From Hamiltosporidium tvaerminnensis FI-OER-3-3 (taxonomy: Eukaryota > Fungi > Microsporidia): DNA of 64,000 nt. Numbering within the stretch: position 1 is the first letter of the stretch; each line of letters opens with the position of its first letter. The stretch spans positions 248,001 to 312,000 of the forward strand of contig CM061255.1 in assembly GCA_022605425.2 (NCBI GenBank), given 5' to 3'. The notes below the pieces were generated by a model. That model ran no database searches. It saw nothing but the letters and a program-made list of their open reading frames with translations, and was not told where the DNA came from. This document shows, in pieces, positions 2,332 through 57,320 of the stretch. The position numbers were made by a program, and so were the translations under genes.

Positions 2332-5300
2332 ATGGGTAGAAGAAAAAAAGTTGACAGCGAAAATATAAAAAATGAAGAAATAAAGGCTGTAAACAACTCG
2401 GAAATTAGTTTAAAAGAGACAAAAACGTATGATAGAGATGAAGTGACTATATCCGAGACACTTCCACCACAACCGACCATCCATAATAACACCCACTCCC
2501 CATCGAGCACTACGTTATATTTTACTGCAGTCAGCCTGCTCGATTCCGCACCCCCTTCTTCCTGTCCCGATTCTTCTGCGTGTGGACCAGCCAACACAAT
2601 GGAAAGCCTCAATGCACCTGCCATGTCAGAAGGAAATCGACTGATGGTATTGCATTCAATACTTGACTCTGTCACAGCCGTAGAGCAGGAATGGCCTAGA
2701 TCTGCTATGTCAGCAGTGCAAAAAAGGTTTGAGAGAATGCCTAGAAATGGCTGGTCTGCAATTCTTAGGTACTATAATGGGAAATTTGGTCGAACTGTTG
2801 ATATCGATGTGTTAAAAAAATTAACACATAATGAGGCAGAAAGGGAAATAAGGCAAGAAGAGAATGGAGAGCGACGTAGAATCGCCACTTGTCTCGCCGA
2901 GCCATGTTCTTTAACTGACACTACACTCTATATGAACCTGAGAGAAAAGTTCTTGTGTAAAATCAAGGAACTCTCTGAGAAGGAAATCGGAGATGTAGTG
3001 GTCCGAACTAGAAAACTTCCAAGTGAATTGGTTGATAGTAAAGTTTTGGAACTCATAAATCGGATCACAGGTGAATATGCTGAATCTCATGTGCCTAAGA
3101 ATGTTAGTGATGCAGCTCGAATCATCCAGGCGGCCAAGGTATGCTAGGACGAGGAAACGCGTAAGGAGAAGCCTAGATCTGCTTGGAAGGAAAACATAGA
3201 AAGTAAAATTTCTAAGCTAGTACTTTCCAAAGATCTCCTCGAGAAGGCTCGTAAACTGGAAAAGCTCTCCACTTCGGAAACGAAAAGTCTCAGAAAAATT
3301 ATGCGAGAGTTTAATCTAGACTTAAGCAAAATAAATGATCTCTCTGAGGCTTTGGTTAAGAAGAATGAGGCTTTGAATGTTTACGAGAAAAAAATTACGA
3401 TGTATGAAAGTAGGAGAAAATTTCGAAAAGAGAATCGTATGTTTGAGTTATTCCGAGGTCGATTCTATCGAGGGTTATCTGAGCGCGTTGAATCCGAGCA
3501 TGTGGTTTATCGTGACGAAATTTCAGAATTTTGGTCTACAATGTGGAATAAAAATGATAAAGTAGTTACATATGATGAGTATTTGATACCTTTCGTGTCG
3601 GATACGCACCAGACCACGTTTCCTTCACTTGAAGAGTTTATAGATATTATCAATTAGCTGCCTAACTGGAAAGCCGCTGGAATTGATGGTATTTATAACT
3701 TTTACATCAATAAACTTACGAACCTTCATAAATATCTTTACGATATTGCGAAAGCCATATGTTTAGAAGGAACGCCTCAAGCCGATTGGTATTATTGTGG
3801 ACTTACTTATCTGATACCTAAAGGTACACCAAAGACTGGCTCTGACTATAGGCCAATCACTTTTATGTCATACCTCTACAAGTTAACGACTAAGTGTGTG
3901 ACGAAAGTCGTTCAACTTGAAGTGGAAAGGCGAGGGTTGCTTGCAGAGAACCAATTAGGGGCGGTAAGAGGTGTGCAGGGAGCGAAAGAGCAGGCTCTAC
4001 TGAATATTGCCTTAAATAAAGAGTATGGAAATCATCTTAAGGCAACATGGATTGATGTTAAAAAAGCTTATGATTCAATAGATCAAGCTTATTTAACTCA
4101 ATGCATTGAAAACCTTAATTTACCTGATTGGATCCTGAAATTTATTAAGGTAATTATATCAAAATGGAAAATTGATATATCAGTAGGGCCTGAAAAAATC
4201 ATGAGCAAGAAGATTGATAGAGGGATTATGCAGGGAGATAGTTTGTCACCATTATTGTTTGTATTGTGTATGGATCCATTGAGCCGAAAGCTTAATGAGA
4301 AGACACAAAAGTGACAATAAAGACAGGTGCAGAATCCCACGCGACTAATCATCTCTTGTTTATTGATGATCTTAAGCTCCTTGCCGAATATGGGCAAACA
4401 TTGGAAGAAATGACGGAGGAGGTTAAAAAGTTTATGAATAATATAGGTTGAAAATTAACAAAGAGAAGTTAGCCACTAATGATCCATGTTGTGAAGATAC
4501 TGCTACCCTTCTTGAAAGAATAGGTGTTTATAAATACCTTGGAATTATAGAAGATAGCAGAGGAATTCCAACAAGTAAGTCGTTTGAGGAACTACAGAAT
4601 AAACTTATAGTACGAGTAGAAAGACTTTGTCGCACGAGATTAAATGCAAGAAATTTATTTCAAGCCATTAATCAACATGCAATTTCTTTACTAAACTATC
4701 ATATAGGTGTACTCCGACTAAAACTGGCTGGCTTCTCTAAGTTAGATGATGCGGTGCGTGCAGTGTTAGTAAAGAACAAAATACATCTACGCCCAGGATG
4801 CAAAGAACGTCTATACCTTCCACGTAAAGAACTTGGAAGAGGTTTACATAGTGTCGAGTTCAAAAGCGAACATATGCTTTTGCAACTCTTGGATTGTCTG
4901 GAAAAACATAAAGATACATCGACCAGAAGAGCAGCAATTCTAAACGTTGAGAATAATAATAAAACCCACCTTTCACTAATTAAAAACTTTTTAAAAATAA
5001 AATATGGGTTGGAAGAGGAAGTCACAAAAAAGAAATTGGAAGAAGCTCAACTAGCTAACCTATATAACGAAATCAAAAACCGAAAACTACATTCAAAGTT
5101 ATATAGCGCTAGAAATAACGAGCTGGTAAGTGTAAATGACTCCTCAAGATGGTTAAAGAAAGGAAGTGTAAGACCACGTGATGAAGCAGTGTTCTGTTAT
5201 ATCCAGGATAGAAATGTTTTCTGGGGTGCAGAAGGTATGTGTCAACACTGCAACCAGTCTAGGAAAACTGTTGATCACTTAGCAACGAGATGTGAAAAAA

Positions 5301-6130
5301 TGCTTGGTCATGACTATACTAGACGACATAATGAAGTGGTACGATGTATACATTTACTCTTGCTGAATAAATATAAGTTTAAGTCTTCTAAACGAATTAG
5401 AAGCCACACAGTTCAAGAAATTCTTGATAACGAATATGCAGAGCTAAGAGTGGACACCAGAATAAAAACTGATGTCAAGATTCGGTGTAACAGACCAGAT
5501 ATATTTATTTTAGACAAGAGACATAATAGGATAACCCTCATTGAAGTAGGAATCACATCCCAAGACTCTCTTCAAATAGTTGAAACAGAGAAGCTTAGGA
5601 AGTATGACCTATTAGGAAATGAGTTAGGTCTTATTTATAAATGCAGTGTAGAGATAATTCCTTGTGTGATGACCTGGGACGGTATTGTGACAAAATACCA
5701 TAAGACGTATGTTAAGAGACTGCAAATACCCATGAATGTAGAGGCATATATACAATCCATAGTACTCAAGAAGACAGTCGAAACAATTTCTTTTGATCGA
5801 CGAAGAGGACTTGAGTCCGGACCAAATGCCGAGGAGAGCTGGGAGAGAGCATCATTAAGTGTTATTTTAGGAGCCGAAATGCATAAACAACCAATACCCC
5901 CTTTAAAGCAAGTAGACAACGAGGAAGATGATGTTAAAACGGAAAATACAAAAAATATTTTACCCTTATTTTGGATGGTATAACCACAGCAAAGGAACCA
6001 TCAACTAATACAAATGAAGAGCTGGAGTTGGAGGAAGAGATAGAAGTGGTTGAAATGGTGGAAAGAATTATTTAAAAGAGAAAAATTCGTTAACGCAGAA
6101 TTCTGTTAAATAAAATTTCTAGGTCATAGA
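2332..6130 (+). mobile_element. Non-LTR retrotransposon with RT and restriction-like endonuclease (R4/Dong-like), copy 1, inactivated
   Basis: RT motifs WKAAGIDG, YRPIT, WIDVKKAYDS, GIMQGDSLSP and LFIDD. CCHC knuckle CQHC-x7-H-x4-C, then RHN, RPD..IEV and K..KY of RLE. Premature TAG at 3145 and 3655 (TAT and TGG in copy 2). Frameshifts near 4300, 4447 and 5962. Reconstructed stop at 6073-6075. Confidence 0.93.
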
Positions 6131-10536: not shown

Positions 10537-10900
10537 AGTGGTTTATTAGTGTTATTTAGTGTTATTTAGTGTTAGAGTTAATTAATGAGTGTTATATTAA
10601 GTAAAGTGTTATTAGTGTTAAGGGGGTGTTATTTAGTGTTAGAGTTAATTAATGAGTGTTATATTAAGTAAAGTGGTTTATTAGTGCTAGTTTAGTGTTA
10701 TTTAGTGTTAGAGTTAATTAATGAGTGTTATATTAAGTAAAGTGTTATTAGGTTTAGTATGGTGTTATTTAGTGTTAGAGTTAATTAATGAGTGTTATAT
10801 TAAGTAAAGTGTTATTAGTGTTATTTAGTGTTATTTAGTGTTATTTAGTGTTAGAGTTAATTAATGAGTGTTATATTAAGTAAAGTGGTTTATTAGTGTT
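10504..10900 (+). repeat. Six copies of a ~36-bp unit containing the last IQGAP codons and stop
   Basis: TTAGAGTTAATTAATGAGTGTTATATTAAGTAAAGTG (LELINECYIK*) occurs 6 times, separated by TTTAGTGTTA-derived spacers. Confidence 0.92.
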
Positions 10901-10925
10901 ATTTAGTGTTATTCTTAGTGTTAAT

Positions 10926-11402
10926 TGTTAGTAAGTATATTATAGTGTTAAGTAAAAGGGTGTTATTTATTAGTAAGTATATTATAGTGTTAAGTAAAAG
11001 GGTGTTATTTATTAGTAAGTATATTATTAGTGTTAAGTAAAAGGGTGTTATTTATTAGTAAGTAGGTTTAGTGTTAAATAAAAGGGTGTTATTTATTAGT
11101 AAGTATATTATAGTGTTAAGTAAAAGGGTGTTATTTATTAGTAAGTAGGTTTAGTGTTAAATAAAAGGGTGTTATTTATTAGTAAGTATATTATAGTGTT
11201 AAGTAAAAGGGTGTTATTTATTAGTAAGTAGGTTTAGTGTTAAATAAAAGGGTGTTATTTATTAGTAAGTATATTATAGTGTTATTTATTAGTAAGTATA
11301 TTGTAGTGTTAGTAAGTATGTTTATTAGTGTTAATTGTTAGTAAGTAGGTTTAGTGTTAGTAAGTAGGTTTATTAGTGTTAATTGTTAGTAAGTAGGTTT
11401 AT
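10926..11402 (+). repeat. ~42-bp minisatellite with two alternating variants
   Basis: TTAGTAAGTA(TATTA|GGTT)TAGTGTTAA(G|A)TAAAAGGGTGTTATTTA about 8 times, decaying to the right. Confidence 0.9.
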
Positions 11403-12514: not shown

Positions 12515-13215
12515 TTTAGAAAATATAGCATCTTAATAGAAAGCGACAGGTGTTATATTTATTTTCATGGCATTAACGCAGTTCTAGGTTTAACATAAAT
12601 AACTCCCTCAGCGCAAAAAGCTATCTTCTATGTTACTTAAATTTCAAAACCTTTTATCTAAAAAGGGTAGAGAACTTATTAAAGGGGTAAGTGGTTGCCT
12701 GGGTGTAATTGCAGGTTGAAATCCGCTTCTGGTTCCTTAGTTACAAGCAGAATCTCCACCATACCCTTACTGAACGAATATACTTTCTGTCAAAATATAT
12801 CCCTGCGACATATATGGAGTTTTTCTGGACATTTAAATATCATATATACGGATATAACTTCTTACTTAGCATTAACTGTATTTTTTAAAATGTGTTCTTT
12901 CTATCTCACAGGCGCCAAAACTTCCAACCTTAGTGAGCAAAGCTAGATTTCAATGCTTTTAAATGGCAATTACCTATAATATTGGCTGCGGTTTCCGTCT
13001 AGCTACATAAAAAACTACAAATTTCTTTTTAAAAAAAAATCATTATTTTGTAGGTTATCTCTTCATGATACCAATTCGAACCGAAAAGCCAAAAATAAAT
13101 GTGGTTTTCATCCTACTAAAATCTAAATAATGATTCCATTCCAATTTCACATACTTATTGACAAAAGTATATATGTTCTAATGAGCTAGCTGATTCATCT
13201 CAGTAAATGACAAAA
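12515..13215 (-). repeat. Dispersed ~700-bp structured non-coding family, copy A (diverged)
   Basis: Shares ATTAACGCAGTTCTAGGTTTAACATA, TACTTAGC, GTGAGCA..GCTAG and AATTACCTA...GGCTGC colinearly with 28595-29300. Confidence 0.85.
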
Positions 13216-18729: not shown

Positions 18730-19450
18730 GACTGATTATCTGAAGAGAAACAAACAACACTAAAAACTATTTTTAATCTAACGATTCGATGAAATTAATG
18801 ATTTGCAAAACAATTGAGTGATTTTTTGATGAAACTATGCTACATTATAATTGTTTCATCTGAATTTGTAAAAAAAGCAAACAACATACAGAATAGTGAA
18901 GGTCATTCAAAAAACTTGGTTTTAGCTTTTTATATATCAAGATAAAAAAACCTTCGGCTGAAACTTAAAGTATTTCTTTTATAAACTTATAAAAATTTGG
19001 GTTTGTTGCCCGCGTGTCAATATTTAGTCCCTGGAAGATACAAAAAAATACCCCTTGAACATTCTCTAACAAGTAAAGTGTTATATATGCTGGTATGACG
19101 GGCAAACGTATCAGTAGACTTCATTTCGGTCGCCGATGCATATCTTATCTAGAAGTTTATTAAGTTTGAAAAGTGTAGAGAATGTAAGGATACTGCATAG
19201 TGTTAGTTGAACCCGGGGGTATTTCAAACTACGATCAAATACTGTGCAATAGACACAAATGAACTTTGAGCAACTGCTTCGCCCCTTAATTTGGTTTTAC
19301 ATATATTTTAAATGCAATGCTTAGAATTATGGTCTTGAAGGGGTACCGATATGGTGTTGGAGGCGGAGTTATTTATATTAAAACTAGAACAGCGTATATT
19401 CCATGAAACAAATATTAAACCTGCCGTTTTTTGAACATATGAACTATTTT
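18730..19450 (+). repeat. Dispersed ~700-bp structured non-coding family, copy D (diverged)
   Basis: TATCTTATCTAGAAGTTTATTAAGTTTGAAAAGTGTAGAG, TGGTATGAC and AGTTATTTATATTAAAACTAGAAC are colinear with 32836-33570. Confidence 0.8.
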
Positions 19451-22707: not shown

Positions 22708-22820
22708 AAACAGGTAGAAATAGAATAACCACATTGATAACTATCTATTCAACGATGAGTGTGTTACTGAATGTGAGAATCATTGATTGCGTTTTTTATA
22801 GTGCATGAACCCCCCTGGAT
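22708..22820 (+). repeat. Fragment matching the 5' part of the dispersed non-coding family
   Basis: GGTAGAAATAGAATAACCACATTGATAACTA...GAGTGTG resembles 55778-55860 and 32847-32900. Confidence 0.5.
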
Positions 22821-23347
22821 CTAGTGCTATTCACCCAGAATCGCTGATTTACAACCGATTAAAATAAACAAACGAGAAAACAAAGAAATGTCTCAAAAAT
22901 CAATGAGCTGGCGTATAAATTGGATTATAGCCTATGGAACATTAAAATAGAGGGTTAATGATGAAAAATGAAGAATTCATGAAAGTTAAAATGCTTTGAC
23001 CCCGCAGAACCGGCTTTCTATAAAATGTTAAAAGACTCGAGATACGCTAGAACATTAACCAGCCACATAATACTTTAGCGTTCATCTGTCTAACCTCAAC
23101 ATAGAGAGGGGGAAGAAGACCAGAATAAGTAAGTAAGCAAGAAACGCAAATAGCTGCTGATTGGGCATATGTTTTGAATAAAAACAGGTATTATCCAATA
23201 AACTTCAAACATAAATATTCATAATAAATAATATACCGTTAAAATTTTCTTCCTAAATTTGATCGAATAGATTTGTTCCATAATCTGAACATTTTTTATC
23301 AAACTTTCAAATTCTTCTATCTTTTAGATTCTTAATCTTTTTCTCTC

Positions 23348-24390: not shown

Positions 24391-24534
24391 TTATTATTCA
24401 ATAAATTTTAAACAATAATCTCTTTATTAACTTAAATATTCTGTTCCTCTTTAAATACGAACTTATTATTCAATAAATTTTAAACAATAATCTCTTTATT
24501 AACTTAAATATTCTGTTCCTCTTTAAATACGAAC
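24391..24534 (-). repeat. 72-bp tandem duplication spanning the GlyRS stop codon
   Basis: TTATTATTCAATAAATTTTAAACAATAATCTCTTTATTAACTTAAATATTCTGTTCCTCTTTAAATACGAAC occurs twice. Confidence 0.92.
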
Positions 24535-26285
24535 AATCCATATTCATTTTTTAAGTTTTCCCATTTCACATTATTGTTACAAAGTTGTTGGATTAAAATT
24601 GGTATTTTTTCAAGAGGTACTCTTATTTGTTCCATGGTGTCTCTTTCTCTAATAGTTGCTTTTTTATCAGACATACTTTGTAAATCAATGGTAATGAAAA
24701 ATGGAACACCTATTTCATCATTTGAAGCATATTTTCTACCTATTGAAACATTTCTTGTGTTTATTGAGAAACTAATATCGTTTTTTGACATTTCTTCTTT
24801 TAAATTTGTAAGTAATAATTGTAGAGATGGTGTTTGTTTTAAAAGAGTTATTACGGCTTTTAAAGGAGCCATACGTGGTACAAATTTCATTACTCCTCTT
24901 TCTTTATCTTCTTTTCTGGTATAAAAAGAATGTTCACACAAACAATAAATTATTCTTCCAATACCAAAACTTGGTTCAATTACACCGGGAACAAATTCTT
25001 CAACGTAAATATTTTTTTTGTTTCGAATAAATTTTATTTCAATATTTTGAAAAGTTAAAATATTATTTTTTAAATTCTTAGAAATAAATTCTTCGGGTAA
25101 ATTATTTAATTCTTTTAAAAAATCACCGGTTTTTTCTTTTAAAATTGATGCGATCGCTTTTTTATCAATTTCTGGTTTCCAAAACTCTACAGATTTAGGT
25201 TCTGAATACTGAATATGAGCATTAAGATTGGTTTTTGAAGCCATTTGATGTTGTGTTAGATCGTAACACGATCTATCTGCAATTCCTACACACTCAATCC
25301 ATCCGTATGAACAGTATATTTCTGCATCCCAACAATCACATGCATAATGTGCCATTTCATCTTTTTTATGTTGTCGAAATCTTAAATATTCCTCGTTTAT
25401 TCCAATTTTTTCTAAAAATATTTTTGTTCTTCCAATAAAATATCCAAGAGACTGATTATTAATTATTTTATTTTTAACGGCATCTCCAATACTCATTTTT
25501 TCAGTTTTTTGAATTTCATTTTCTTTACTAAAATGTAAATTAATTTTTAAATCAGAAATAGTTTGAAATTTTGGATGATCTTTTTCTTTTGGATGAACAA
25601 AATATTCAATTTCTGCTTGTTCAAATTCCCTTACTCGTAAAAGACCAGATCGAGGAGAAATTTCATTTCTAAACACTTTTCCAATACTGGCAGAAGCAAA
25701 AGGTAATTTACTATTATTTAATTCATAAAGTTTTTTAAAATTTATAAATTGTCCTTGGGCTGTTTCTGGTCTAAGAAATGCCATATTTTGTGTTTTAGGT
25801 CCAATAAATGTCGAAAACATTAAATTAAAATATGTTGTATTACCAAGTTCATTATTATTTGGACTTTTTATTTCATAAGCTTTAATAATTTCATCACATT
25901 CTTTAATATTCAAACAGTCTAAATTATCAATAATTCTTTTTATTTGATCTGTTTCTTCCATTTTTGAAAATTCTTGTTTTAATAAATGATCTGCTCTATA
26001 GAACTCACCTGTGACTTTGTCAAAAACAAGTAAATCACAGAATTTATCAACATGACCACTCGCCTTTAAAACTTCATATGGTGTCAAAATTGTTGTATCT
26101 AATTCGTACATCATCTCTTCTATTATAAAAAATTTACGCCAAAAATTTATAAAATTGTTTTTTAGAGGACATCCGTACGGTCCATAGTCATATAAACCTG
26201 ATACACCTCCATAAATGTGAGCTGATGGTGAAATAAAAAAATTCTTTTTTAAAAGTCTTTCAACTTTTTCTTGCTCAAATTCCAT
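24504..26285 (-). CDS. GRS1: Glycyl-tRNA synthetase (eukaryotic homodimeric type)
   Basis: IYGGVSGLYDYGP, LRPETAQGQF, FRNEISPRSGLLRVREFEQAEIE, VIEPSFGIGR and the anticodon domain SIGRKY. The probable start is ATG 26285 (MEFEQ, preceded by CCC), not the TTG at 26348. Confidence 0.97.
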   Translation of the reverse strand: MEFEQEKVERLLKKNFFISPSAHIYGGVSGLYDYGPYGCPLKNNFINFWRKFFIIEEMMYELDTTILTPYEVLKASGHVDKFCDLLVFDKVTGEFYRADHLLKQEFSKMEETDQIKRIIDNLDCLNIKECDEIIKAYEIKSPNNNELGNTTYFNLMFSTFIGPKTQNMAFLRPETAQGQFINFKKLYELNNSKLPFASASIGKVFRNEISPRSGLLRVREFEQAEIEYFVHPKEKDHPKFQTISDLKINLHFSKENEIQKTEKMSIGDAVKNKIINNQSLGYFIGRTKIFLEKIGINEEYLRFRQHKKDEMAHYACDCWDAEIYCSYGWIECVGIADRSCYDLTQHQMASKTNLNAHIQYSEPKSVEFWKPEIDKKAIASILKEKTGDFLKELNNLPEEFISKNLKNNILTFQNIEIKFIRNKKNIYVEEFVPGVIEPSFGIGRIIYCLCEHSFYTRKEDKERGVMKFVPRMAPLKAVITLLKQTPSLQLLLTNLKEEMSKNDISFSINTRNVSIGRKYASNDEIGVPFFITIDLQSMSDKKATIRERDTMEQIRVPLEKIPILIQQLCNNNVKWENLKNEYGLFVFKEEQNI

Positions 26286-28594
26286 GGGTATAAAACCTTT
26301 TTTTTTGATAAAAAAATATTTACAATATAGTTTTCTTAAAGAGCTCAAGATATGTAAAATAAAATTTATTGCAAATAGTTTTTTTAAAAGAAGACAGGAT
26401 ATTTAAAATAAAATAAATTTTAAGAAAAATGGTTTTTTTCTTGATTTTTTGTTTGGTTTAAATTACCATCAGCTGTTCGTTTGATATTTTTTTATAATTG
26501 ACTGCTTTGCTATATTCCAAACTAATGGGTCGATTAAGTCATATTATTAACGCTTTTAGATTCAATAAGTCAGGTGTTGTATCGCCTGAAACTCTCGTTG
26601 AAAGCATCTGTAGTATAGGCATGAGGTTTCTATGCTTTAAATGTCTTTGTACTGAATTATTTATACTTCTGCATGGCTCTTTTCGAAATTTGGTTTTGAT
26701 AGTGATTGAATTTTTAGATTGAAATAAATGAATTCGGCGTTCCTTTAAAACACAGTTGATACTTTTTATATCAAAATTTATACCCGTAATCAGAGACTTA
26801 TGAGGCACATTGTCTGGTTTTACTTATATTCACACACTCTTTTTATCTTAAGCGAAATATTTTCTAACCTAAATGGTTGAATAAGATTTCGATGGTTTGC
26901 CAGAAACTCTTAGCTTCAAAATTTTTTGGTTTCAAAGATTTAAACCAAATCCTAGTGAACGGAGTCACAAGTTCAATGTGTCTTTTTGCATTACTTTTTT
27001 TATCTAAAATAAATGTATCTTTCTTTTATTCGGAATCTAAAAAAATGTTTTTATCCTTGTATTCATCTTATTTTTCCACATTTATCTCAATATTTTTTCG
27101 AACAAAGTGACTCGAAGTTCATTTTGATAACTTTAATTTTTATTTATGAAGAAGAAGTGAAGTAAAAATTAAACTACATCTTTGTAATGCTTTTATAGTT
27201 GTTTCTGGATATTTTTACATCTACTTTCGAAATCATTCCATAATGATCTTATGAGATTCTAAAATATTGACACGTGCTTTCTGCTAACCAATAGTTTTAT
27301 GTAATTTGAATTTACCAGAATAATAGTTTACCGTTATCAAAAGTTTCGTTGCTTAAGTCATATACAAGTGCCGTGAACAAAAAACAAATTATTTTTCAAT
27401 ATAATATAACATTAAATGTCATTTTTTTTCTTGTTATTTAGATATATTGATAGATGGTTAAACTTTGCTATTTTTTGTTAGTGAATTTTTTCCTATCTAT
27501 ATCAAATCAAATGATTCCTTTGATCACTACAAAATATCTTTATTATTCTTTACCGCAGAAATCAACTCATTAAAATTTTCACCTTAAATTTCGTTAATAA
27601 ATAGGTAGAAAAGCTATATTATGTTTTTTATTTACCACGAGGTTTTTTTCAATGGTAAAATTGAACAACCATATACGTTTCTTAATTTAGAGATGTCCAC
27701 GTGTATTATTTTTGTCCAAAATGGATATATTTTATCATTAAATTCGGAGAAATATTAGTTTTAAATTTATTATACACTTAATTGTAAGTCTATAGACAAT
27801 ATTGCAGATAATACCTGCTTAATTTTCATGTTTTAATTTAGTGACAAAAGGCTTTCGGCAAAAATTACTAAAACCTTCACTTTGCTTTTTTCAAAGTAAA
27901 CAACTGCAAAGCTAGTTTTTTATCTTATTTTCAAAATATTTATAGGGATTCAAAGCATATATAAAAGATGTTTTTTAAGTAATGACTAATAAAATGTTTA
28001 GTTTTATGGAAAAACTACATTAATTCAGCACTCACAAGGTGTTGATCTATTATATAGAAAGTATTTGAAATCATTTTATCCAAAGAATTAAATTTTTTGG
28101 TTTTAACGTGTTCTCGCATATATACATATTTGTGTATTTGCAACTCGAAAAATTCATACCTTAAAAGCATAATAAAAATTCAAACGGCGTTCTTTAATTA
28201 TTCTTCTTCCAAATTTGTTTCTAATGATTTGCCCGAAGCCTAATTCTATATAATTTTTTGATTCTGATATATTTAATTGACAAAGATTTATATCAAGATG
28301 TTTTGTGTGATAAAACATTTTTAAAAGATGTTTGATTGAAGAATTATATGCCTGTTTTGAATTTATCATGTGTATTCTCCACTTTTTAGAATCTTAATAT
28401 TTAGGCTTAAATTTATATAATTTCTGTGATTATTATTCTTTGAATTCGAAACTTAACTATCTTTTTTTAGCAAACTTATAGTTTTTACATTAAAACGTAA
28501 ACCCTTTCGGATTGAAATAAATCAATAAAATTATTCGTTAAAAATTATGTAAAAATATGTAGTTTAAGATATTATAACTCAACAAGATAAATTT

Positions 28595-29300
28595 ATTTAA
28601 ACATATCAACTCATTTTGAAATAGTGGCACGTGTTATATTTGTTTTCATGAAATTAACGCAGTTATAGGTTTAACATAGATAACTGATACCTTGACACTC
28701 TATCGGTACCACCTGCGATACATACGTACCATAGCCTTTCATCTATCAGGTGTATAGAACCTAATATATAGGCTAAACAGTTTCCCGTAGCTCCTTAATG
28801 TCCGTTGCATGGAGTGTGATTGAAGGCCGAAGCCCCCTGGGCTCCCCCAAGACTATGCAGCATTCCCACTTACGCTACACTTTCCGAATCCAATAAACTT
28901 CTAGCTAAGATATATTTCATAGACTTACATGGTGTCTACCTAGACGGTCCAATGTCATACCAACAGGTAAACCTGCTACTTAGCTCTCCCGGCTTTCAAT
29001 GGTTTTTTTTCTAAATCTCTCGGCGCTAAGTTTTCTAACCCGAGTGAGCAGGCTAGGCTCCCATGCTTTTAAACGGAAATTACCTACATGTTCGGCTGCA
29101 ATCTATATACATAAAAAACTACAAATAAATTTGCACAAAAAATTTCGCTATTTCGTAGACCTCTCTTCCTCATAGAAATTCAAATGGAACAACCAGAATT
29201 GTAATTGATTCATTTCACTAAAAATACAAATAATAATCTTCTCACATTTTCATCTTCAAGCAGATTATTTATTTGTTATTCTCCCTCTCTATAAATATGA
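28595..29300 (-). repeat. Dispersed ~700-bp structured non-coding family, copy B (well preserved)
   Basis: The reverse complement aligns with 32836-33570. The core has long identical runs such as GAAATATATCTTAGCTAGAAGTTTATTGG and TAAGTGGGAATGCTGCATA. Confidence 0.93.
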
Positions 29301-32835: not shown

Positions 32836-33570
32836 TTTATGTCACTGGTGGAGGGAGGATAACCGCTTAAAAAACTTTCTGCTTGGCAATGAGTGTGTGA
32901 AACTGTTTTAAGATTATTGTTTAGATTTTTGGTGGAAATAAAACCACACATCATCTTCAGTTGTTCCATGGGAGTTGTTAGGAGGAGAAGAGGTCTAAGA
33001 AATGAAGAAACTTTTTCTACGATTTATTTTTAGTTTTTGACGTAACCAGATTGCCGACTGCAGCTAAACATGTAGGTAATTTCCATGTAAAAGCATGGAA
33101 ACCTAGCCTTGCTCACTCGAGTTAGAAGACTTAGCGCCTGGGAGATATAAAACAAAAAACCATTTAAAGCCAGGAAAGCTAAGTAGCAGGTTATATCTGT
33201 TGGTATGACATTGCACTGTCTAGGTGGACCTCATGTAAATCTCTGAAATATATCTTAGCTAGAAGTTTATTGGGTTCGGAAAGTGTAGAGTAAGTGGGAA
33301 TGCTGCATATTCTTGGGGGAGCCCAGGAGGGGGCTTCGGCCTTCGATCACATTCCATGCAACGGACATTAAAGAAAATAGGGCAACCCTCGCCTAGTAAT
33401 TAGGTGCTACACACCTGGTAGATGAAAGGGTCTGGGGCTTAGGTATCGCAGGGGTTACTGATGGAGTGTTGGGTAGCAGTTATTTCTGTTAAACCTAGAA
33501 CTGCTTTAATGCCATTTAAACACATATAAAACTCGCCACTATTTTAAAAAAGATGTGATACTTTTAAATA
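32836..33570 (+). repeat. Dispersed ~700-bp structured non-coding family, copy C (well preserved; candidate ncRNA or SINE-like)
   Basis: GC-richer island with no long ORF. Hairpins TTTCCATG/CATGGAAA, ACTTAGC/GCTAAGT, TCTTGGG-GGAG-CCCAGGA, GGGGGC-TTCG-GCCTTC and GCAGTT/AACTGC. Confidence 0.93.
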
Positions 33571-34498
33571 AAAAAATTTACAAACCTTAAAAAAAATCTA
33601 AAAGAGGTTTAAAAAATTTTTTTTTGGTTCTTATATGGGTAAACTCCTCATATAGATTTGACATCATAATACTTTTATTTTATGAATCAAAAAAAAAAGT
33701 TATCAATTTTCTTATTTGTCTTGATCATTGTTCAAATTGACCGTAACTTATAAGACACCCTTTAACATCCAATTGCCTTGATAACACCGTTACTACAATA
33801 CTTATAATAACCTCTTTTATTAATCTATCTTTATTTAAAAACGATCTCTTTATTAAAAAAATAACATACTTTATTTAGATTAAATAGACAAACATATATA
33901 TACATTTATTCGTTTTTAGACATATATATAGATACATTTGTTCTATACTTCATATTTATTTATTTTTATTTTTATCTGAAATCCGCTATATATCTTCTTC
34001 GTGTATTCTATTTCATGGATATTACTATCGGTCTATAACCCAAGCTTTGCTAATTCCCGAATAACAACAGATTAAATGAAAGAGATTTAAAACTTTTATT
34101 TAACATCCTCGACACAGAAAAGTAGAATAGGAATGGAATATTAGGTACGTAAGTAATATTACTACAGGTTGCTTGTTAAAAACTAAAAAGTTTTTAAACA
34201 ATAAAGTATAATGATTAGAGATAAATTTGAAAATGCGCAATTATAAAAATTTGTTTGTGTAAGCTATTTGTTTTGTGTTTTCCTAAGAATTTAATTCGCG
34301 TTTAGATTTTGGGCTATAAGAAAATTAAATGTATTTTGTTCGTACAGTATAAATAAGCTGTTATCTCTATAAGTATTATCGTTATCATAAACAATTACAA
34401 CTTTAGATAGCTATTTTAGAAAATATCTTGATTGCTAAGATTATCGAATTGCCATTTATAGTAATAAAATCTATATAAAATCCGAAAAAAATTACTCC

Positions 34499-40144: not shown

Positions 40145-40395
40145 AATTCCTTAAAATTGTACTATAATTAACACCCTTTTATTTATGAGTGCTTCTATCT
40201 AAATAATTATCACCCTTTTATCTTTAAGTACTTCTTATATATAATTATCACCCTTTTATCTATAAGTACTTCTTATATATAATTATCACCCCTTTAATTA
40301 AAAGGACATCTCATAAATAATTAACACCCTTTTATTTATGAGTGCTTCTATCTAAATAATTAACACCCTTTTATCTATAAGTACTTCTTATATAT
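40145..40395 (-). repeat. Tandem repeats including the stop-codon region of the gamma-tubulin complex gene
   Basis: TTATCT(A/T)TAAGTACTTCTTATATATAA x3, interleaved with TAATTA(A/T)CACCCTTTTA units. Confidence 0.85.
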
Positions 40396-43185: not shown

Positions 43186-43224
43186 TTTTTTATAAAAGGG
43201 GGTTGGTTGGATATTTGTAGAATT

Positions 43225-43510
43225 AGGTTTTTATATATATTTTAAGAAGAAAGGGGGAGAGTAGAGTAGGAAAATAGAATAGAGGGGTAGAAAAAGTGAT
43301 TCAATTAAGGTTTTATATATATTTTAAGAAAAAAGGGGGAGAGTAGAGTAGGGAAATAGAATAGAGGGGTAGAAAAGGTGATTTAGTTGGGTTGTATATA
43401 TTATTTTAAGAAAAAAAGGGGGGAGTAGAGTAGGGAAATAGAATAGAGGGGTAGAAAAAGTGATTCAATTAAGGTTTTATATATATTTTAAGAAGAAAGG
43501 GGGAGAGTAG
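43225..43510 (-). repeat. ~80-bp purine-rich tandem repeat (about 3.5 copies) upstream of the GCP gene
   Basis: TTTTAAGAA..AAGGGGGAGAGTAGAGTAGG.AAATAGAATAGAGGGGTAGAAAA repeated. Confidence 0.88.
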
Positions 43511-43789
43511 ATGGGTAGAATAAGTGGATATAACCAGATTTTTTTATTTAAGAAGAAACTATGGTAAGAGGGGAATTGAATAGAGGGGAAAATAAGTGAT
43601 TATAAACCGGTATTTTATTTATAATAATTTGGAGAGATTGGAGGAGTAAGTGATGTTTTATAAATGTTTGTATTAATTTAGGTGAGAGGAGAATATATTT
43701 AAATAGAAAGGAGGAATTAATTTGTAAAATATAAATGTTTTATTTTATTTGAAATAATAACTTTCTCCATGATTAATTCAAGAATAATA

Positions 43790-46184: not shown

Positions 46185-49100
46185 ATGGGAAAAAAGAGAA
46201 AAAAAAGAAAAAATCAAACAACGGAAATAGTTTAAAGAATAAAAACGTGGAAGAGAGAGTAACATATCCGAGACGCTTCCACCACAACGACCATCTATAA
46301 TAACACCACCCCCATCGAGCAATACGCTTCAGGCACCCAATCAGCCTGCTCGATTCCGCACACCCTTCTTCCTGTCCCGATTCTTCTGCGTGGGACCAGC
46401 CAACACAATGGAAAACCCAATGTACCGCCATTCCAGAAGAAACGATGATGGTATTGCATTCAATACTGACTCGTCACAGCCGTAGACAGGAATGGCCTAG
46501 ATCTGCTATTTCAGCGGTCAAAAAGGTTTGAGAAATGCCAGAAATGGCTGGTCTGCAATTCTTAGGTACTATAATAGGAACTTTGGTCGAACTGTTGATA
46601 TCGATGTGTTAAAAAAATTAATACATAATGAGGCAGAAAAAAATAAGCAAGAAGAGAATGGAGAGCGACGTAGAATCGCCACTGTCTCGCCGAGCCATGT
46701 TCTTTAACTACACTACACCTATATGAACCTGAGAGAAAAGTTCTTGTGTAAAACAAGGAACTCGGAGAAGGAAACGGAGATGAGTGGTCCGAACTAGAAA
46801 ACTCCAAGGAATTGGTGATAGTAAAGTTTGGAACTCATATATCGGATTACAGGTGAATATGCGAATCCATGTGCCTAAGAATGTTAGTGATGCAGCTCGA
46901 ATCATCCAGGCGGCTCAGGTAGCTATGACGAGGAAACGCGAAGGAGAAGCGTAGATCCGCTTGGAAGAAAACATAGAAAGTAAAATTTCAAGTTAGTACT
47001 TCCAAAGATCCCTGAGAAGGCCGTAAACTGGAAAAGCTCCCACTCGGAAACGAAAAGTCTCAGAAAAATAGCGAGAGTTTAATCTAGACTTAACAAAATA
47101 AATGATCTCTCCGAGGCTTTGGTTAAGAAGAATGAGGCTTTGAACGTGTACGAAAAAAAATACGATGTATGAAAGTAGGAGGAAATTTCGAAAAGAGAAT
47201 CGTATGTTTGAGTTATTCCGAGGTCGATTCTATCGAGGGTTATCTGAACGCGTTGAATCCGAGCATGTGGTTTATCGTGACGAAATTTCAGAATTTTGGT
47301 CTACAATGTGGAATAAAAAGATAAAGTAGTTACATATGATGAGTATTTGATACCTTCGTGTCAGATACGCACCAGACCACGTTTCCTTTACTTGAAGAGT
47401 TTATAGATATCATCAATTGGCGCCTAACTGGAAAGCCGCTGGAATTGATGGTATTTATAACTTTACATCAAGAAACTTACGAGCCTTCAAAATATCTTTA
47501 CGATATTGTGAAAGCCATATGTTTAGAAGGAACGCCTCAAGCCGATTGGTATTATTGTGGACTTACTTATCTGATACCTAAAGGTGCACCAAAGACTGGC
47601 TCTGATTACAGACCAATAACTTTTATGTCCAACCTCTACAAGTTAACGACTAAGTGTGTAACGAAAGTGGTTCAGGTTGAGGTGGAAAGACGAGGATTAC
47701 TTTCAGATAATCAGTTGGGAGCGGTTAGAGGAGTGCAAGGACAAAGAACAGGCCCTATTGAATATGCCATTAATAAAGAGTACGGAAACAACTAAGCAAC
47801 ATGGATTGATGCAAAAAGCTATGATTCAATAGATCATGCTATTGACCAATGCATGAAAACCTTAATTTACCTGATTGGATCCTGAAATTTATTAAGGTAA
47901 TTATATCAAAATGGAAAATTGATATATCAGTAGGGCCTGAAAAAACATGAGCAAGAAGATTGATAGAGGGATTCGCAAGGAGATAGTTTGTCACCATTAT
48001 TGTTTGTGTTGTGTATGGATCCATTGAGCCGAAAGCTAATGAAAATACACAAAAGTGACAATAAAGACAGATGCAGAATCCCACGCGACTAATCATCTCT
48101 TGTTTATTGATGATCTTAAGCTCCTTGCCGAAGATGGACAAACATTGGAAGAAATACGGAGGAGGTTAAAAAGTTTATGAATAATATAGGATTGGAAATT
48201 AACAAAGAGAAGTAGCCACTAATGATCCATGTTGGAAGATACCACCCTTCTGAAAGAATAGGTGTTTATAAATACCTTGGAATTATAGAAGATAGCAGAG
48301 GAATTCCAACAAGTAAGTCGTTGAGGAAGTACAGAATAAACTTATAGTACGAGTAGAAAGACTTTGTCGCACGAGATTAAATGCAAGAAATTTATTTCAA
48401 GCCATTAATCAACATGCAATTCTTTACTAAACTATCATATAGGTGTACTCCGACTAAAACTGCTGGCTTCTCAAGTTAGATGATGCGGTGCGCAGTGTCA
48501 AAAGAACAAAATACATCTACGCCCAGGATGCAAAGAACGTCTATACCTTCCACGTAAAGAACTGGAAGAGGTTTACATAGTGTCGAGTTCAAAAGCGAAC
48601 ATATGCTTTTGCAACTCTTGGATTGTCTGAAAAACATAAAGATACATCGACCAGAAGACAGCAATCCTAAAGGTTGAGAATAATAATAAAACCCACCTTC
48701 ACTAATTAAAAACTTTAAAAAATAAAATACGGGTTGGAAGAAAGTCACAAAAAGAATTGGCAAAGCCAACTAGCAACCTAATAACGAAATCAAAAACCGA
48801 AAACTACATTCAAAGTTATATAGCGCTAGAAATAACGAGCTGGTAAGTGTAAATGACTCCTCAAGATGGTTCAAGAAAGGAGTAAGACCACGGACGAAGC
48901 AGTGTTCGTTATATCCAGGATAGAAAGTATCTGGGGTGCAGAAGGTAGCCACACGCAACCAGTCTAGGAAAACAGTCGATCACTTAGCAACGAGATGAAA
49001 AAATGATTGGCAGACATACTAGACGACATAATGAAGTGGTACGATCTAACATTTACTCTTCTGAATAAATATAAGTTTAAGTCTCGAAACAAATTAGAAG

Positions 49101-49803
49101 CCACCAGTTCAAGAAATTCTGATAACGTATATGCAGAGATAAGAGTACACCAGAATAAAAACGATGTCAAGATTCGGTAACAGAACAGATATATTTATTT
49201 TAGACAAGACAGAATAGGATAACCCCATTGAAGTAGGAATCACATCCCAAGACTCCTCAAATAGTTGAAACAGAGAAGCTAGGAAGTAGACCTATTACAA
49301 ATGAGTTAGGTCTTATTTATAAATGCAGCGTAGAGATAATTCCTTATGTGATGACCTGGGACGGTATTGTGACAAAATACCATAAGACGTATGTTAATAG
49401 ACTGCCAATATCCATGAATGTAGAGGCATATATACAATCCATAGTACTCAAGAAGACAGTCGAAACAATTTCTTTTGATCGACGAAGAGGACTTGAGTCT
49501 GGACCAAATGCCGAGGAGAGCTAGGGAGAGAGCATCATTAAGTGTTATCTTAGGAGCTGAGATGCATAAACAACCAATACCCCCTTTAAAGCAAGTAGAC
49601 AACGAGGAAGATGATGTTAAAACGGAAAATACAAAAAAATATTTTACCCCTTATTTTGGATGGCATAACCACAGCAAAACAACCAACAACTAATACAAAT
49701 GAAGAGTTGGAGTTGGAAGAAGAGATAGAAGTGGTTGAAATGGTGGAAAGAATTATTTAAAAAGAAAAATTTGTTAACCCAGAATTTCATTAAATAAAAA
49801 TTA
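46185..49803 (+). mobile_element. RLE-type non-LTR retrotransposon, copy 2, with many 1-bp deletions
   Basis: Colinear and mostly near-identical to 2332-6130 from the ATG to the 3' UTR. Flanked by the direct repeat ATGGTAATAGA at 46174-46184 and 49804-49814. Confidence 0.93.
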
Positions 49804-55771: not shown

Positions 55772-55900
55772 ATATAGGGTGGAAAAAGGATAAACACATT
55801 AAAAACTAACTGATTGCCAAGAGTGTATGAAATTGATGGAAAAATCACTGTTGATATTTTGATGGAATATAACCCACATCGAATCTATAGACCAATCCCC
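55772..55900 (+). repeat. Fragment matching the 5' part of the dispersed non-coding family
   Basis: GGTGGAAAAAGGATAAACACATTAAAAACT...GAGTGTATGAAATTG...GATATTTTGATGGAA versus copy C GGTGGAGGGAGGATAACCGCTTAAAAAACT...GAGTGTGTGAAACTG...GATTTTTGGTGGAA. Confidence 0.65.
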
Positions 55901-56619
55901 TATAATCCCGAAGGGAAACATATTAAAAGAAGCGATTGAAAAATTTCCAGTTTTTCATCTTTTACACCGAGTGGTAAAAGAGGCATGGAATAACTAAGTA
56001 AATATGTTGATAGGCTGAGATCCGCGCTGATTATTTGTAAAAAACGTGGGTTGAATTTACTTTATAAATTATGACCGAAAGTGCATATTTGCTACTTTGG
56101 ATTTGTAGATATATTATGTGTATTATTTTTTAAAATATTTGTTCATGAAATTTGTAGGACAAATGCAGACACAATCACTAGTGCAAATATACGAACGTGA
56201 TTAAATGTATGAATGGAAGAACTTTATAAAAGTTCAGTAATTTATTTGAATATTTTTGTAAAAAAACATGATCAATATACATGATTATTTTTTCAAATCT
56301 CTTTTATATGAACTTGAAAAATTTGTTTTAAAAATATTACTAATAAACATTGAAGCAATACTTTTAATTATGTTTGCACAACATCTAATGAGTTATTGGC
56401 CTCAGAGACTTTTTATATAAGTTAATATGGTCCGCAGCCCAAAATTTTGCAAAGCTTGGTCTGTCCAAAACAATTATGACTAAAAAATGAGGCTTATATG
56501 GTTTATCCATTCTTAAAGAGTCTAAATAACTCGAAATACATAGGATGTAAAATATTAATTTATTGTCTGTACGGCCGACTATTTTATCTTAAAATTTCTC
56601 GTTTTTTGCTTTGTTTTAT

Positions 56620-57320
56620 TAATGTGTGTCAGAATCACTGTAAAAAAATATTTTCAGAGCAAATGTTGAGATAAGTGATGTTGAAATTATTGTTATGTCT
56701 TCAGTAGAAATAAATAAACGAGATAATTTCGGACTTTTTGTTGAAATATATTTATGGGAGGGAAACTCTACACCATAGTGATCCTTTCTCAAAAAGTTAG
56801 CTTTTAAAATTTAAATAACTAAATTGCGAGCCCTGCATGTGAACACACAAGTAATTTTTAAGAAAATAATTTAAACCTAGCTTTATTTACTCAGATTAGA
56901 AGACTTTGAATCTGTTAATTATATTAACATATCATTTAGAATAGAAAATTCTAATTAGTGATTATACTCGGGGTATACCCTGCGACGTCTAGCTGCACGC
57001 ATGTAAATCACCGAGATATATCTGAACCGAAAGTCTATTAAATTCCGAAACTGTAGAGTATGTAATAATGCTTATGGCTTGAGAAGGCCCAAGGTTGGCT
57101 AAAATCACTCAGAATAGAAACAACGGTCATATAAGAACTCCGGATGACTGCTTCCCCTCTTAACTGGTTTTGTTGATCTGCAGAAAAAAATACTTAGATG
57201 TAGGTATCATAAAGAGATGTGATGGTATTTTAGAGGTGCTGTTATTTATGTTAAACCTATAACTGTGCTATTGCATGAAAAGATACAACATGTGCCACTT
57301 TTTAGAACAATGAGATATTC
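56620..57320 (+). repeat. Dispersed ~700-bp structured non-coding family, copy E (diverged)
   Basis: AAACCTAGC, TTAGAAGACTT, CATGTAAATC, TGTAGAGTA, CAACGG and GTTATTTATGTTAAACCTATAACTG..GTGCCACT are colinear with copies B and C. Confidence 0.85.

What the first reader, a model, noticed from the sequence alone, without database searches (positions are those of the whole stretch)
32836..33570. High-copy dispersed non-coding family that looks like a large structured RNA
Seen: near-full copies at 12515-13215(-), 18730-19450(+), 28595-29300(-), 32836-33570(+) and 56620-57320(+), plus 5' fragments near 22710 and 55775, i.e. about one per 10 kb. They are GC-richer than the flanks, differ by 1-bp indels, share no ORF, and show no obvious TIRs, LTR ends or poly(A). 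The B/C core (33059-33370) is more conserved than the 5' third. Helices in copy C: 33080-87/33094-101; 33129-35/33178-84 enclosing 33137-41/33170-74; 33185-90/33196-201; 33218-21/33226-29; 33283-88/33407-12 enclosing 33304-08/33356-60, which in turn encloses a GGAG-loop hairpin (33311-28) and a C(UUCG)G hairpin (33329-44); a GNRA position (GCAA in C, A, D; GAAA in B); and a 3' hairpin 33476-81/33499-504 followed by a T-run. I recognise no known RNA family. Inference: an undescribed ncRNA family or a SINE-like/ribozyme-bearing retroelement, possibly mobilised by the local LINEs.
Basis: partly seen in the sequence, partly recalled or inferred. Interest (0 to 1): 0.88.

Follow-up and report, generated by a model that had tools for sequence, protein, structure and literature searches.

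The report
SINE-like retroposon family in a microsporidian
The repeated ~730-base non-coding sequence is a parasitic "jumping" element that copies itself through RNA using the enzymes of a neighbouring LINE; it is not a cellular structured-RNA gene, and it makes up a few percent of this Daphnia parasite's genome.

Summary
The window comes from Hamiltosporidium tvaerminnensis (microsporidian parasite of Daphnia; 21.6 Mb, ~26% GC). They belong to a ~728-bp family with roughly 1,000-1,700 copies, about 3-5% of the genome.

Young copies elsewhere in the genome (about 97% alike) settle its nature:
- Sharp ends: 5' GTGGAGGGAGGATAAC, 3' TTTTAAATAAA(G).
- Variable 9-19-bp target-site duplications at 38 of 42 sites. 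In 580 mismatched flank pairings the longest exact repeat never exceeded 11 bp.
- 0-3 extra bases at the 5' junction and 0-15 at the 3' junction.
- Some 5'-truncated copies.
- One paralogous empty site.

This is the signature of target-primed reverse transcription by a non-autonomous, SINE-like retroposon.

The abundant, intact LINE with a restriction-like endonuclease (RLE), two copies of which lie in the window, has the same duplication lengths and the same terminal AAATAAA. It is the likely driver.

The "large structured RNA" reading is not supported:
- Rfam and ARAGORN find nothing.
- The folding z-score is -1.3.
- RNAalifold finds almost no consensus structure.
- Compensatory changes do not exceed the controls.
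- Old copies simply decay from GC to AT.

The first ~104 nt are shared with a second, ~222-bp family. Other first-stage readers of this scan noted the same family on other pieces of this genome. No RNA-seq test was possible.

The parts
32848..33572 (+). Copy C: full-length copy of the ~728-bp SINE-like retroposon. It is about 92% identical to the young genomic subfamily, and its TSD is no longer recognisable.
   Evidence: nhmmer HMM positions 1-728, 838.6 bits; 91-92% identity to 39 genomic copies; flanks shown.
32848..32955 (+). 'Head' module of copy C (~104-108 nt). Its primary sequence is conserved and it is shared with a second, ~222-bp family. I infer that it defines the RNA 5' end, as an internal promoter or a processing signal.
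   Evidence: Head HMM hit, E = 9e-26; alignment of 20 heads from both families with no consensus structure; folds worse than shuffles, z = +1.4 to +1.8.
33562..33572 (+). 3'-terminal motif TTTTAAATAAA. It contains AATAAA and resembles the RLE LINE terminus TTTTATTAAATAAA.
   Evidence: Sharp 3' boundary in 30 aligned copies; LINE ends shown.
28592..29287 (-). Copy D: near-full copy, about 80% identical to the young subfamily.
   Evidence: nhmmer HMM positions 4-728, 592 bits; BLAST 80% to copy C.
12519..13164 (-). Copy A: old, decayed copy covering HMM positions 36-721, GC 32%.
   Evidence: Its best genomic relatives are only 66-71% identical.
18827..19436 (+). Copy B: old, 5'-truncated or decayed copy covering HMM positions 83-704.
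   Evidence: Its best genomic relatives are 71-74% identical, and only over the 3' half.
56756..57319 (+). Copy E: old, 5'-truncated copy covering HMM positions 135-718.
55779..56002 (+). Copy of a second, short (~222-bp) SINE-like family. It has the same head but a different body and tail (...GGAATAAGTAAGTAAGT in its relatives).
   Evidence: (207 genomic candidates at 74-81% identity).
22714..22870 (+). Diverged copy related to the short family, comprising the head plus part of the short-family body.
   Evidence: Head HMM hit, E = 7e-9; BLAST to short-family copies over about 156 nt.
2332..5971 (+). RLE-type LINE copy with frameshifts, 74-84% amino-acid identity to the intact family. It belongs to the family proposed as the autonomous partner.
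   Evidence: tblastn with the L043 ORF; ORFs at 2317-3147 and 4448-5983.
46276..49621 (+). Decayed or diverged RLE-LINE relic, 35-45% amino-acid identity spread over several frames.
   Evidence: tblastn; GC-rich block at 46-50 kb.

Best explanation
The finding is one copy of a high-copy, non-coding, non-autonomous non-LTR retroposon of Hamiltosporidium tvaerminnensis. It is 'SINE-like' in the sense used for Entamoeba EhSINEs. It is about 728 bp long, with roughly 1,000-1,700 copies.

Shown:
- The element has fixed ends.
- It inserts with 9-19-bp target-site duplications and a few untemplated bases at the junctions.
- It is sometimes 5'-truncated.
- It has no coding capacity.
- After insertion it decays neutrally towards AT.

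Inferred:
- An RNA that starts at G1 of the conserved ~104-nt head is copied into nicked AT-rich DNA by target-primed reverse transcription. The head probably acts as an internal promoter or another module that defines the 5' end, since a second family with a different body and tail also carries it.
- The RNA ends at, or up to 15 nt beyond, the terminal AAAUAAA. It is occasionally polyadenylated.
- The enzymes come from the abundant, intact ~3.8-kb LINE that encodes a reverse transcriptase and a C-terminal restriction-like endonuclease (RLE). This LINE ends in the same AAATAAA and leaves the same insertion signature.
The element is not a cellular structured-RNA gene.
For: Identity of the genome:
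- The window's GlyRS is 99% identical to that of H. tvaerminnensis.
- The 21.64-Mb assembly with N50 1,444,059 matches PMC12449221.

Copy number:
- 1,306-1,470 candidate loci.
- The young copies fetched are about 97% alike.

Ends and insertion signature:
- Sharp ends in 30 aligned copies.
- TSDs of at least 9 bp at 38 of 42 sites, median 13 bp. The 5' junction carries 0-3 extra nt (one case of 7) and the 3' junction 0-15.
- An earlier exact-match test found repeats of at least 10 bp at 26 of 29 sites. In 580 mismatched flank pairings the mean was 0.6 bp and the maximum 11 bp.
- Empty site: in L022 the element sits inside a LINE copy. The uninterrupted LINE in L043 (3042-3222) shows the 14-bp TTCTTCTACCTCTT once.
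- 5'-truncated copies: window copies B and E, L048b, and a 70-nt 3' stub in L011.
- 3' junction extras are shared between copies (L006/L007 and L091/L096). L015 carries 10 nt plus A15. These fit read-through or polyadenylated RNA templates.

Non-coding nature and decay:
- No ORF longer than 77 codons, no Pfam hit and no database homologue.
- In old copies there are 720 GC-to-AT changes against 355 AT-to-GC.

Partner LINE:
- More than 100 RT hits lie in open frames of about 1,250-1,300 aa.
- LINE copies are 98-99.5% alike.
- Pfam finds an RT domain and no APE domain.
- CCHC, RHN and RPD...E motifs are visible in the C-terminus.
- LINE TSDs are 10-18 bp, median 14, with the same T-rich start and A-rich end of the target as the SINE sites.
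- The terminus ...TTTTATTAAATAAA is conserved across three LINE subfamilies.
- Two copies of this LINE lie in the window.
- The other LINE families sampled end differently, in (ATTTT)n or poly(A), or have only about 6 copies.
Against: - No transcription data.
- The similarity to the LINE is limited to about 11-14 terminal bases of AT-rich sequence. The LINE's conserved GTTAACCCAGAA block is absent from the element (blastn found nothing longer). The partner assignment therefore rests on the insertion signature, on abundance and on co-activity.
- The fetched young SINE copies are about 3% diverged, whereas LINE copies are 0.5-1.8% diverged, so the two bursts may not be simultaneous.
Some selected local structure in the master copy cannot be excluded.
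Confidence: 0.82

Rival explanations
1. It is a dispersed family of genes for a large structured non-coding RNA, or a ribozyme-bearing RNA, with a cellular or catalytic function of its own.
For: All ten listed helices pair perfectly in copy C. Across 13 copies, 79.9% of cells are paired against 77.4% in shuffles. The element is GC-rich for this genome. Windows 161-480 have mildly negative z-scores, down to -2.2. A weak HDV-like P1 can be drawn, with 7 pairs of which 4 are G.U, and a 6-bp stem at 40-45/67-72 also forms.
Against: TSDs, junction extras, 5' truncation, an empty site and about 1,000-1,700 copies show insertions, not genes. There is no Rfam hit even at E = 10, and no tRNA. The whole-element z-score is -1.33. 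RNAalifold gives a covariation term of -0.27 and finds no structure at all in the head shared by two families. Both-side changes are no higher than in most of the slid controls. Old copies decay from GC to AT with no sign of constraint.
Confidence: 0.04
2. It is a non-autonomous retroposon, but its driver is not the RLE LINE. The driver would be another LINE lineage not sampled here, or the element would be an internally deleted derivative of one.
For: Only about 11-14 terminal bases are shared with the RLE LINE. A rare RT-only LINE carries ...GTGAATTACATGTTATTAAATAAAG in its 3' UTR. This aligns with the element's last 19 nt, GTGATACTTTTAAATAAAG, if three gaps are allowed. The genome has at least four LINE lineages.
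Against: The RT-only LINE has only 6 copies, all in subtelomeric duplications, and its repeat unit continues past that motif. The head HMM found no hit in any sampled LINE locus apart from inserted SINE copies. blastn found no body similarity to any sampled LINE. TSD length and target composition match the RLE LINE.
Confidence: 0.12
3. It is a DNA-level repeat: a MITE or other non-autonomous DNA transposon, a solo LTR, or a segmentally duplicated block.
For: It is non-coding and high in copy number. Two pairs of copies do lie in segmental duplications (L002/L012 and L017/L092).
Against: There are no terminal inverted repeats; the apparent TIR was an orientation artefact, resolved. TSD length varies from 9 to 19 bp rather than being fixed. 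The ends are asymmetric, with extra bases and 5' truncations. Flanks are unrelated in 38 independent sites. The sampled Gypsy element shows no similarity.
Confidence: 0.02

Closest known systems
EhSINE1 / EhLINE1 of Entamoeba histolytica (PMC2996970, PMC2657916)
   Same: Both are 0.5-0.7-kb non-coding, non-autonomous non-LTR retroposons in an AT-rich parasite genome. Neither head derives from tRNA, 7SL or 5S. Both show variable TSDs and hundreds of copies, and both are paired with a LINE. From my own knowledge, the Entamoeba LINE also carries a restriction-like endonuclease and inserts without strict site specificity. Both fail the strict Pol III definition of a SINE.
   Different: EhSINE1 shares about 70 bp of 3' sequence with EhLINE1 (PMC2996970), whereas here only about 11-14 terminal bases are shared. 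EhSINE1 has internal 26-27-bp repeats and this element has none. There is no sequence similarity between the two. The host here is a microsporidian, and none of the microsporidian papers I read describes a SINE.
RIME/ingi and NARTc/L1Tc of trypanosomes; R2 'SIDE' elements (my own knowledge and PMC2996970)
   Same: These are non-autonomous partners that ride on a LINE's machinery. They have a conserved 5' module that defines the RNA 5' end.
   Different: Those elements are deletion derivatives that resemble their LINE along their whole length. This element has no detectable similarity to any sampled LINE apart from the last few bases.
Canonical Pol III SINEs (tRNA-, 7SL- or 5S-derived, with a LINE-derived tail)
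   Same: Both have a modular build of head, body and tail, with the head shared between families that differ in body and tail. Both depend on a LINE and create TSDs.
   Different: There is no similarity to tRNA, 7SL or 5S. The element is 728 bp long. T5-T6 runs at positions 79, 165 and 188 of the sense strand would stop Pol III. There is no poly(A) or simple-repeat tail.

Membership tests
Non-autonomous non-LTR (TPRT) retroposon | Variable-length target-site duplications flank independent insertions | tested here: met
   38 of 42 sites have TSDs of 9-19 bp, median 13. In 580 mismatched flank pairings the maximum was 11 bp. An empty-site paralogue was found.
Non-autonomous non-LTR (TPRT) retroposon | Fixed 3' end, with 5' truncation and heterogeneous junction bases | tested here: met
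   Sharp 3' end at TTTTAAATAAA(G). 5'-truncated copies are B, E, L048b and the L011 stub. There are 0-3 extra nt at the 5' junction and 0-15 at the 3' junction.
Non-autonomous non-LTR (TPRT) retroposon | No coding capacity of its own | tested here: met
   The longest open stretch is 77 codons. There is no Pfam hit and no homologue.
Non-autonomous non-LTR (TPRT) retroposon | An active autonomous LINE is present in the same genome | tested here: met
   More than 100 RT hits lie in open frames of about 1,250-1,300 aa, and copies are 98-99.5% alike.
Non-autonomous non-LTR (TPRT) retroposon | A 3' tail shared with the partner LINE | tested here: inconclusive
   Only TTTTA(TT)AAATAAA is shared. The LINE's conserved GTTAACCCAGAA block is absent.
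Non-autonomous non-LTR (TPRT) retroposon | Transcribed into an RNA intermediate | not testable with these tools
The only indirect hints are shared 3' extras and one A15 tract.
Canonical SINE (strict definition) | Head derived from tRNA, 7SL or 5S, with Pol III A and B boxes | tested here: not met
   ARAGORN finds 0 tRNAs in the window, which includes five copies. Rfam finds nothing at the gathering threshold or at E <= 10. T5-T6 runs lie inside the sense strand.
Structured ncRNA family | Conserved secondary structure supported by covariation | tested here: not met
   RNAalifold gives -7.24 kcal/mol with a covariation term of -0.27 and predicts no pairs in the head. 18 pairs have both-side changes, against 18-20 in most slid controls. 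One caveat applies: the copies are neutrally decaying insertions, so they are a weak test of the master RNA.
Structured ncRNA family | Folding energy below that of shuffled sequence | tested here: not met
   z = -1.33 for the whole element. The best 120-nt window has z = -2.23 among 16 windows, and the head has z = +1.4 to +1.8.
Self-cleaving-ribozyme-bearing retroelement (HDV-like or hammerhead 5' end) | A recognisable ribozyme fold at the 5' end | tested here: inconclusive
   No Rfam ribozyme hit at E <= 10. Only a weak P1 can be drawn, with 4 of its 7 pairs G.U, and it is not kept in the short family. Pseudoknotted HDV-like folds are hard to exclude by sequence alone.
MITE / DNA transposon | Terminal inverted repeats and fixed-length TSDs | tested here: not met
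   There are no TIRs once orientation is corrected. TSD length varies from 9 to 19 bp.
RLE-type (R2-superfamily) LINE, for the proposed partner | Central RT domain, C-terminal CCHC plus PD-(D/E)xK-type nuclease, and no APE domain | tested here: met
   RVT_1 with E = 1e-27. No APE hit even at E = 10. CQHCGKSGKTVDHLATRC, RHNEVV and RPDIFILD...LIEVGIT are read from the translation. The RT matches the R2 and L1 solved structures. The nuclease motifs were read by eye and not scored against a profile.

The most novel reading that the evidence does not exclude
This would be the first characterised SINE-type element of Microsporidia, and it would work by an unusual logic. A ~104-nt, unstructured, sequence-conserved head, shared by at least two families, would act as a portable internal Pol II-type promoter or 5'-processing module. 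The GC-rich middle, which resembles no LINE sequence, would be a structured decoy selected in the master copy to capture the RLE LINE protein in trans. Only the terminal AAAUAAA would be shared with the LINE.
Probability: 0.15. Interest if true: 0.6.

Novelty: new member of a known kind. Interest (0 to 1): 0.33.

Why it matters
Hamiltosporidium is the standard example of secondary genome expansion in microsporidia. Published repeat annotations list DNA, LINE, LTR and 'Unknown' repeats but no SINE class (PMC12449221, PMC4202319, PMC7313128).

Naming this family moves a few percent of the genome from 'unknown repeat' to a defined LINE-dependent retroposon. It explains many GC-rich non-coding islands that could otherwise be mistaken for RNA genes. 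It also provides presence/absence markers for the Daphnia-parasite metapopulation studies.

The LINE/SINE pair is compact enough for mechanistic work: the LINE has no 5' UTR and the SINE shares only a few terminal bases with it. For general biology, however, it is an ordinary kind of element.

Tried and rejected
- RNA-seq and DNA read laying. It still counted, so there is no expression or polymorphism evidence. No letters of L003:755-794 were afterwards sent as a query to any search tool. L003 as a whole stayed in the local FASTA target file used by scripts, and only positions 1441-2300 of it were analysed.
- The look-up of sequencing runs found four holders from one study and no RNA holder.
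- Rfam at the gathering and E <= 10 thresholds, and ARAGORN, found nothing.
- An apparent terminal inverted repeat in the first alignment was an artefact of unoriented loci.
- A search for proteins matching the longest open stretch, and a Pfam scan of three stretches, found nothing.
- A metagenome scan with a 31-nt core pattern gave 0 hits.
- The idea from another note that insertions sit 30-38 nt upstream of start codons does not hold for this family. Among 29 loci, 1 has a same-sense ORF starting 77 nt downstream, and 3 have divergent ORFs starting 61-76 nt upstream.
- A hand search for an HDV-like fold at the 5' end gave only a weak, G.U-rich P1.
Small pieces were still obtainable.
- The clade of the LINE within RLE elements (R2, R4, Dong, NeSL and others) was not determined.

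Full report
ORGANISM AND SETTING

The window's glycyl-tRNA synthetase (24507-26348, minus strand) is 99% identical to that of Hamiltosporidium tvaerminnensis. The assembly has 21,638,905 bases in 17 contigs, and contig C3 is 1,444,059 bases long. These figures match the near-chromosome assembly described in PMC10542269 and PMC12449221. The genome is about 26% GC. The window also carries ordinary intronless genes, including an IQGAP-like gene, a gamma-tubulin complex component and a rhodanese-domain gene. Two LINE copies lie in it as well.

Yes, as far as the repeat itself goes.
- BLAST and a profile search place copies at 13164-12519(-), 18827-19436(+), 29287-28592(-), 32848-33572(+) and 56756-57319(+).
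- Head-only matches lie at 22714-22821 and 55779-55885.
- The in-window copies are only 64-80% alike.
- Copy C is 91-92% identical to 39 other genomic copies, and the first-look candidate count is 1,306-1,470.
- Densities in the window and in about 160 kb of unrelated loci extrapolate to roughly 1,000-1,700 copies, or 3-5% of the genome.
- Young copies are 41% GC and copy C is 40% GC, against about 25% in the flanks.
- The longest stop-free stretch is 77 codons, with no Pfam or database match.

WHAT THE YOUNG COPIES SHOW

I aligned 30 copies, each with 200 bp of flank on both sides, after correcting orientation. The boundaries are sharp: 5' GTGGAGGGAGGATAACC... and ...GATGTGATACTTTTAAATAAA(G) 3'. 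An apparent terminal inverted repeat in the first, unoriented alignment was an artefact.

The flanks carry direct repeats.
- In an exact-match test, 26 of 29 sites had repeats of at least 10 bp. In 580 mismatched left/right flank pairings the mean was 0.6 bp and the maximum 11 bp.
- With 20 further copies fetched, 38 of 42 sites have TSDs of 9-19 bp, median 13. The 5' junction carries 0-3 extra bases (one case of 7) and the 3' junction 0-15.
- In L022 the element sits inside a LINE copy. The uninterrupted LINE in L043 (3042-3222) serves as the empty site and contains TTCTTCTACCTCTT once, whereas L022 has it on both sides of the insert plus two extra bases.
- 5'-truncated copies exist: window copies B and E, L048b, and a 70-nt 3' stub in L011.
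- Some 3' extras are shared between copies: TTTTTAA in L006 and L007, and GTAyTTCTTT in L091 and L096. L015 carries ten extra bases followed by A15. These are best read as short 3' transductions from read-through, occasionally polyadenylated, RNA.

Together these features are the signature of target-primed reverse transcription. They exclude a MITE, a solo LTR and a gene family.

THE LIKELY DRIVER

An RT profile search finds 466 candidate sites. More than 100 of the scored hits lie in open frames of about 1,250-1,300 aa.

This dominant LINE is about 3.8 kb long and occurs as three subfamilies about 83% alike. Copies within a subfamily are 98-99.5% identical.
- It has a central RT domain and no APE domain, even at E = 10.
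- Its C-terminus carries CCHC, RHN and RPD...E motifs typical of restriction-like endonucleases. I read these from the translation.
- Its RT matches the solved L1 and R2 proteins.
- It starts exactly at its ATG and ends ...GTTAACCCAGAATTTTATTAAATAAA.
- At 15 of 17 sites it has TSDs of 10-18 bp, median 14, with 0-9 extra 5' bases. The target shows the same T-rich start and A-rich end as the SINE sites.

The element shares only the terminal TTTTA(TT)AAATAAA with this LINE. No longer similarity to any sampled LINE was found.

The other LINE lineages are poorer candidates. An APE-type LINE ends in (ATTTT)n. RT-only, near-telomeric types end in poly(A) or have only six copies. One of the rare ones has an internal ...GTGAATTACATGTTATTAAATAAAG that resembles the element's tail, so I keep a rival explanation open. 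I put the RLE LINE as driver at about 0.6-0.7. The retroposon nature itself is well above 0.9.

THE 'STRUCTURED RNA' CLAIM

- The whole young element folds no better than shuffles: z = -1.33, and 2 of 20 shuffles fold as well. The reverse strand gives z = -0.75.
- The best of sixteen 120-nt windows has z = -2.2. The first 200 nt fold worse than shuffles, at z = +1.4 to +1.8.
- RNAalifold on 13 copies spanning roughly 50-95% identity to a young copy, gaps counted as differences, returns -7.24 kcal/mol with a covariation term of -0.27.
The number of pairs changed on both sides (18) is no higher than in most of the slid controls (18-20). Moreover, the structure was derived from one of the aligned sequences.
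- Rfam gives nothing at the gathering threshold or at E <= 10, and ARAGORN finds no tRNA.
- Differences between old and young copies are dominated by GC-to-AT changes, 720 against 355, although GC is the minority base. This explains both the GC contrast with the flanks and the low identity of the window copies.
- Conservation along the element is nearly flat.

One caveat applies. Decaying insertions are a weak test of constraint on the master RNA, so selected local hairpins cannot be excluded.

THE HEAD

The first ~104 nt recur with a different ~120-nt body and a different tail (...GGAATAAGTAAGTAAGT). This defines a second family of about 222 bp with 207 candidates. The sampled copies are 74-81% identical to the window's copy.

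Across 20 heads from both families, the primary sequence is conserved in blocks, but no consensus structure is predicted. The 5' junctions carry only 0-3 extra bases, so the RNA 5' end must be set precisely at G1. I infer that the head does this, either as an internal promoter or as a processing signal.
- T5-T6 runs at positions 79, 165 and 188 argue against Pol III for the full-length RNA.
- A weak HDV-like P1 can be drawn, but it is G.U-rich and not preserved in the short family.

COMPARISON WITH KNOWN ELEMENTS

The closest analogue is EhSINE1/EhLINE1 of Entamoeba (PMC2996970). It has a similar size, a head that is not Pol III-derived, variable TSDs and a LINE partner. It differs in sharing about 70 bp with its LINE, whereas here the shared stretch is about 11-14 bases.

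The element fails the strict definition of a SINE. Unlike RIME/ingi or the R2 SIDE elements, it is not a deletion derivative of a sampled LINE.

Full-text searches found no paper that mentions both Hamiltosporidium and SINE, and no paper describing SINEs in microsporidia. The microsporidian repeat surveys I read list DNA, LINE, LTR and 'Unknown' repeats. Other first-stage readers of this scan independently noted the same ~730-bp family on other pieces of this genome.

LIMITS

- There is no expression or polymorphism evidence. Those places were not sent to any search tool afterwards.
- Large genomic loci could not be cut.
- The LINE's clade within RLE elements was not determined.

VERDICT

This is a real, abundant and previously unnamed SINE-like retroposon, a new member of a known kind. 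It is not a novel structured RNA.

Noticed in passing
L043:3018-6877 (-); window 2332-5971 (+): The dominant RLE LINE begins exactly at its start codon (ATGGGTAGAAAG...) and has no 5' UTR. Its last 26 nt, GTTAACCCAGAATTTTATTAAATAAA, are invariant across three subfamilies that are otherwise about 83% alike.
   Followed up: partly
L031, L034-L040, L042, L050 (G000 C4:7827, C9:2559, C9:6055, C13:50903 and 59462, C14:50722, C16:184454, C2:1800794, C3:1392065): Several LINE lineages have ORF1 (~400 aa) and an RT ORF (~850-940 aa) but no endonuclease domain detectable by Pfam. Most of them sit within about 2-60 kb of contig ends, which suggests they are telomere-associated. They share a hairpin (GTTAGTACTTGGCCATACTAAC or similar) right after the stop codon. 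One type has only 6 copies.
   Followed up: partly
window 55779-56002 and 22714-22870; L055-L062: A second SINE-like family of about 222 bp (207 candidates; sampled copies are 74-81% identical to the window's copy). It shares the 104-nt head but ends in GTAA/TAAG-type repeats, so it probably rides on a different LINE.
   Followed up: partly
L051 and L054 (G000 C1:616800-626700 and C1:585300-595200): An APE-type LINE with ORF1 of 457-558 aa and ORF2 of 1,195 aa ends in (ATTTT)n. It lies inside an inverted segmental duplication of at least 9.6 kb that is 98-99% identical.
   Followed up: no
L087 (G000 C14:454945-455811): A SINE copy lies about 12 nt upstream of a LINE 5' end and mimics a 5' UTR.
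   Followed up: no
window 10504-11400, 40163-40402, 41264-41501, 43221-43511: Strand-asymmetric minisatellites with periods of 30-140 bp and GC skew up to 0.8 lie in intergenic DNA or at ORF edges. They are unrelated to the SINE.
   Followed up: no
L002/L012 and L017/L092: These pairs of SINE copies have identical flanks, so some copies multiplied by segmental duplication rather than by retroposition.
   Followed up: no
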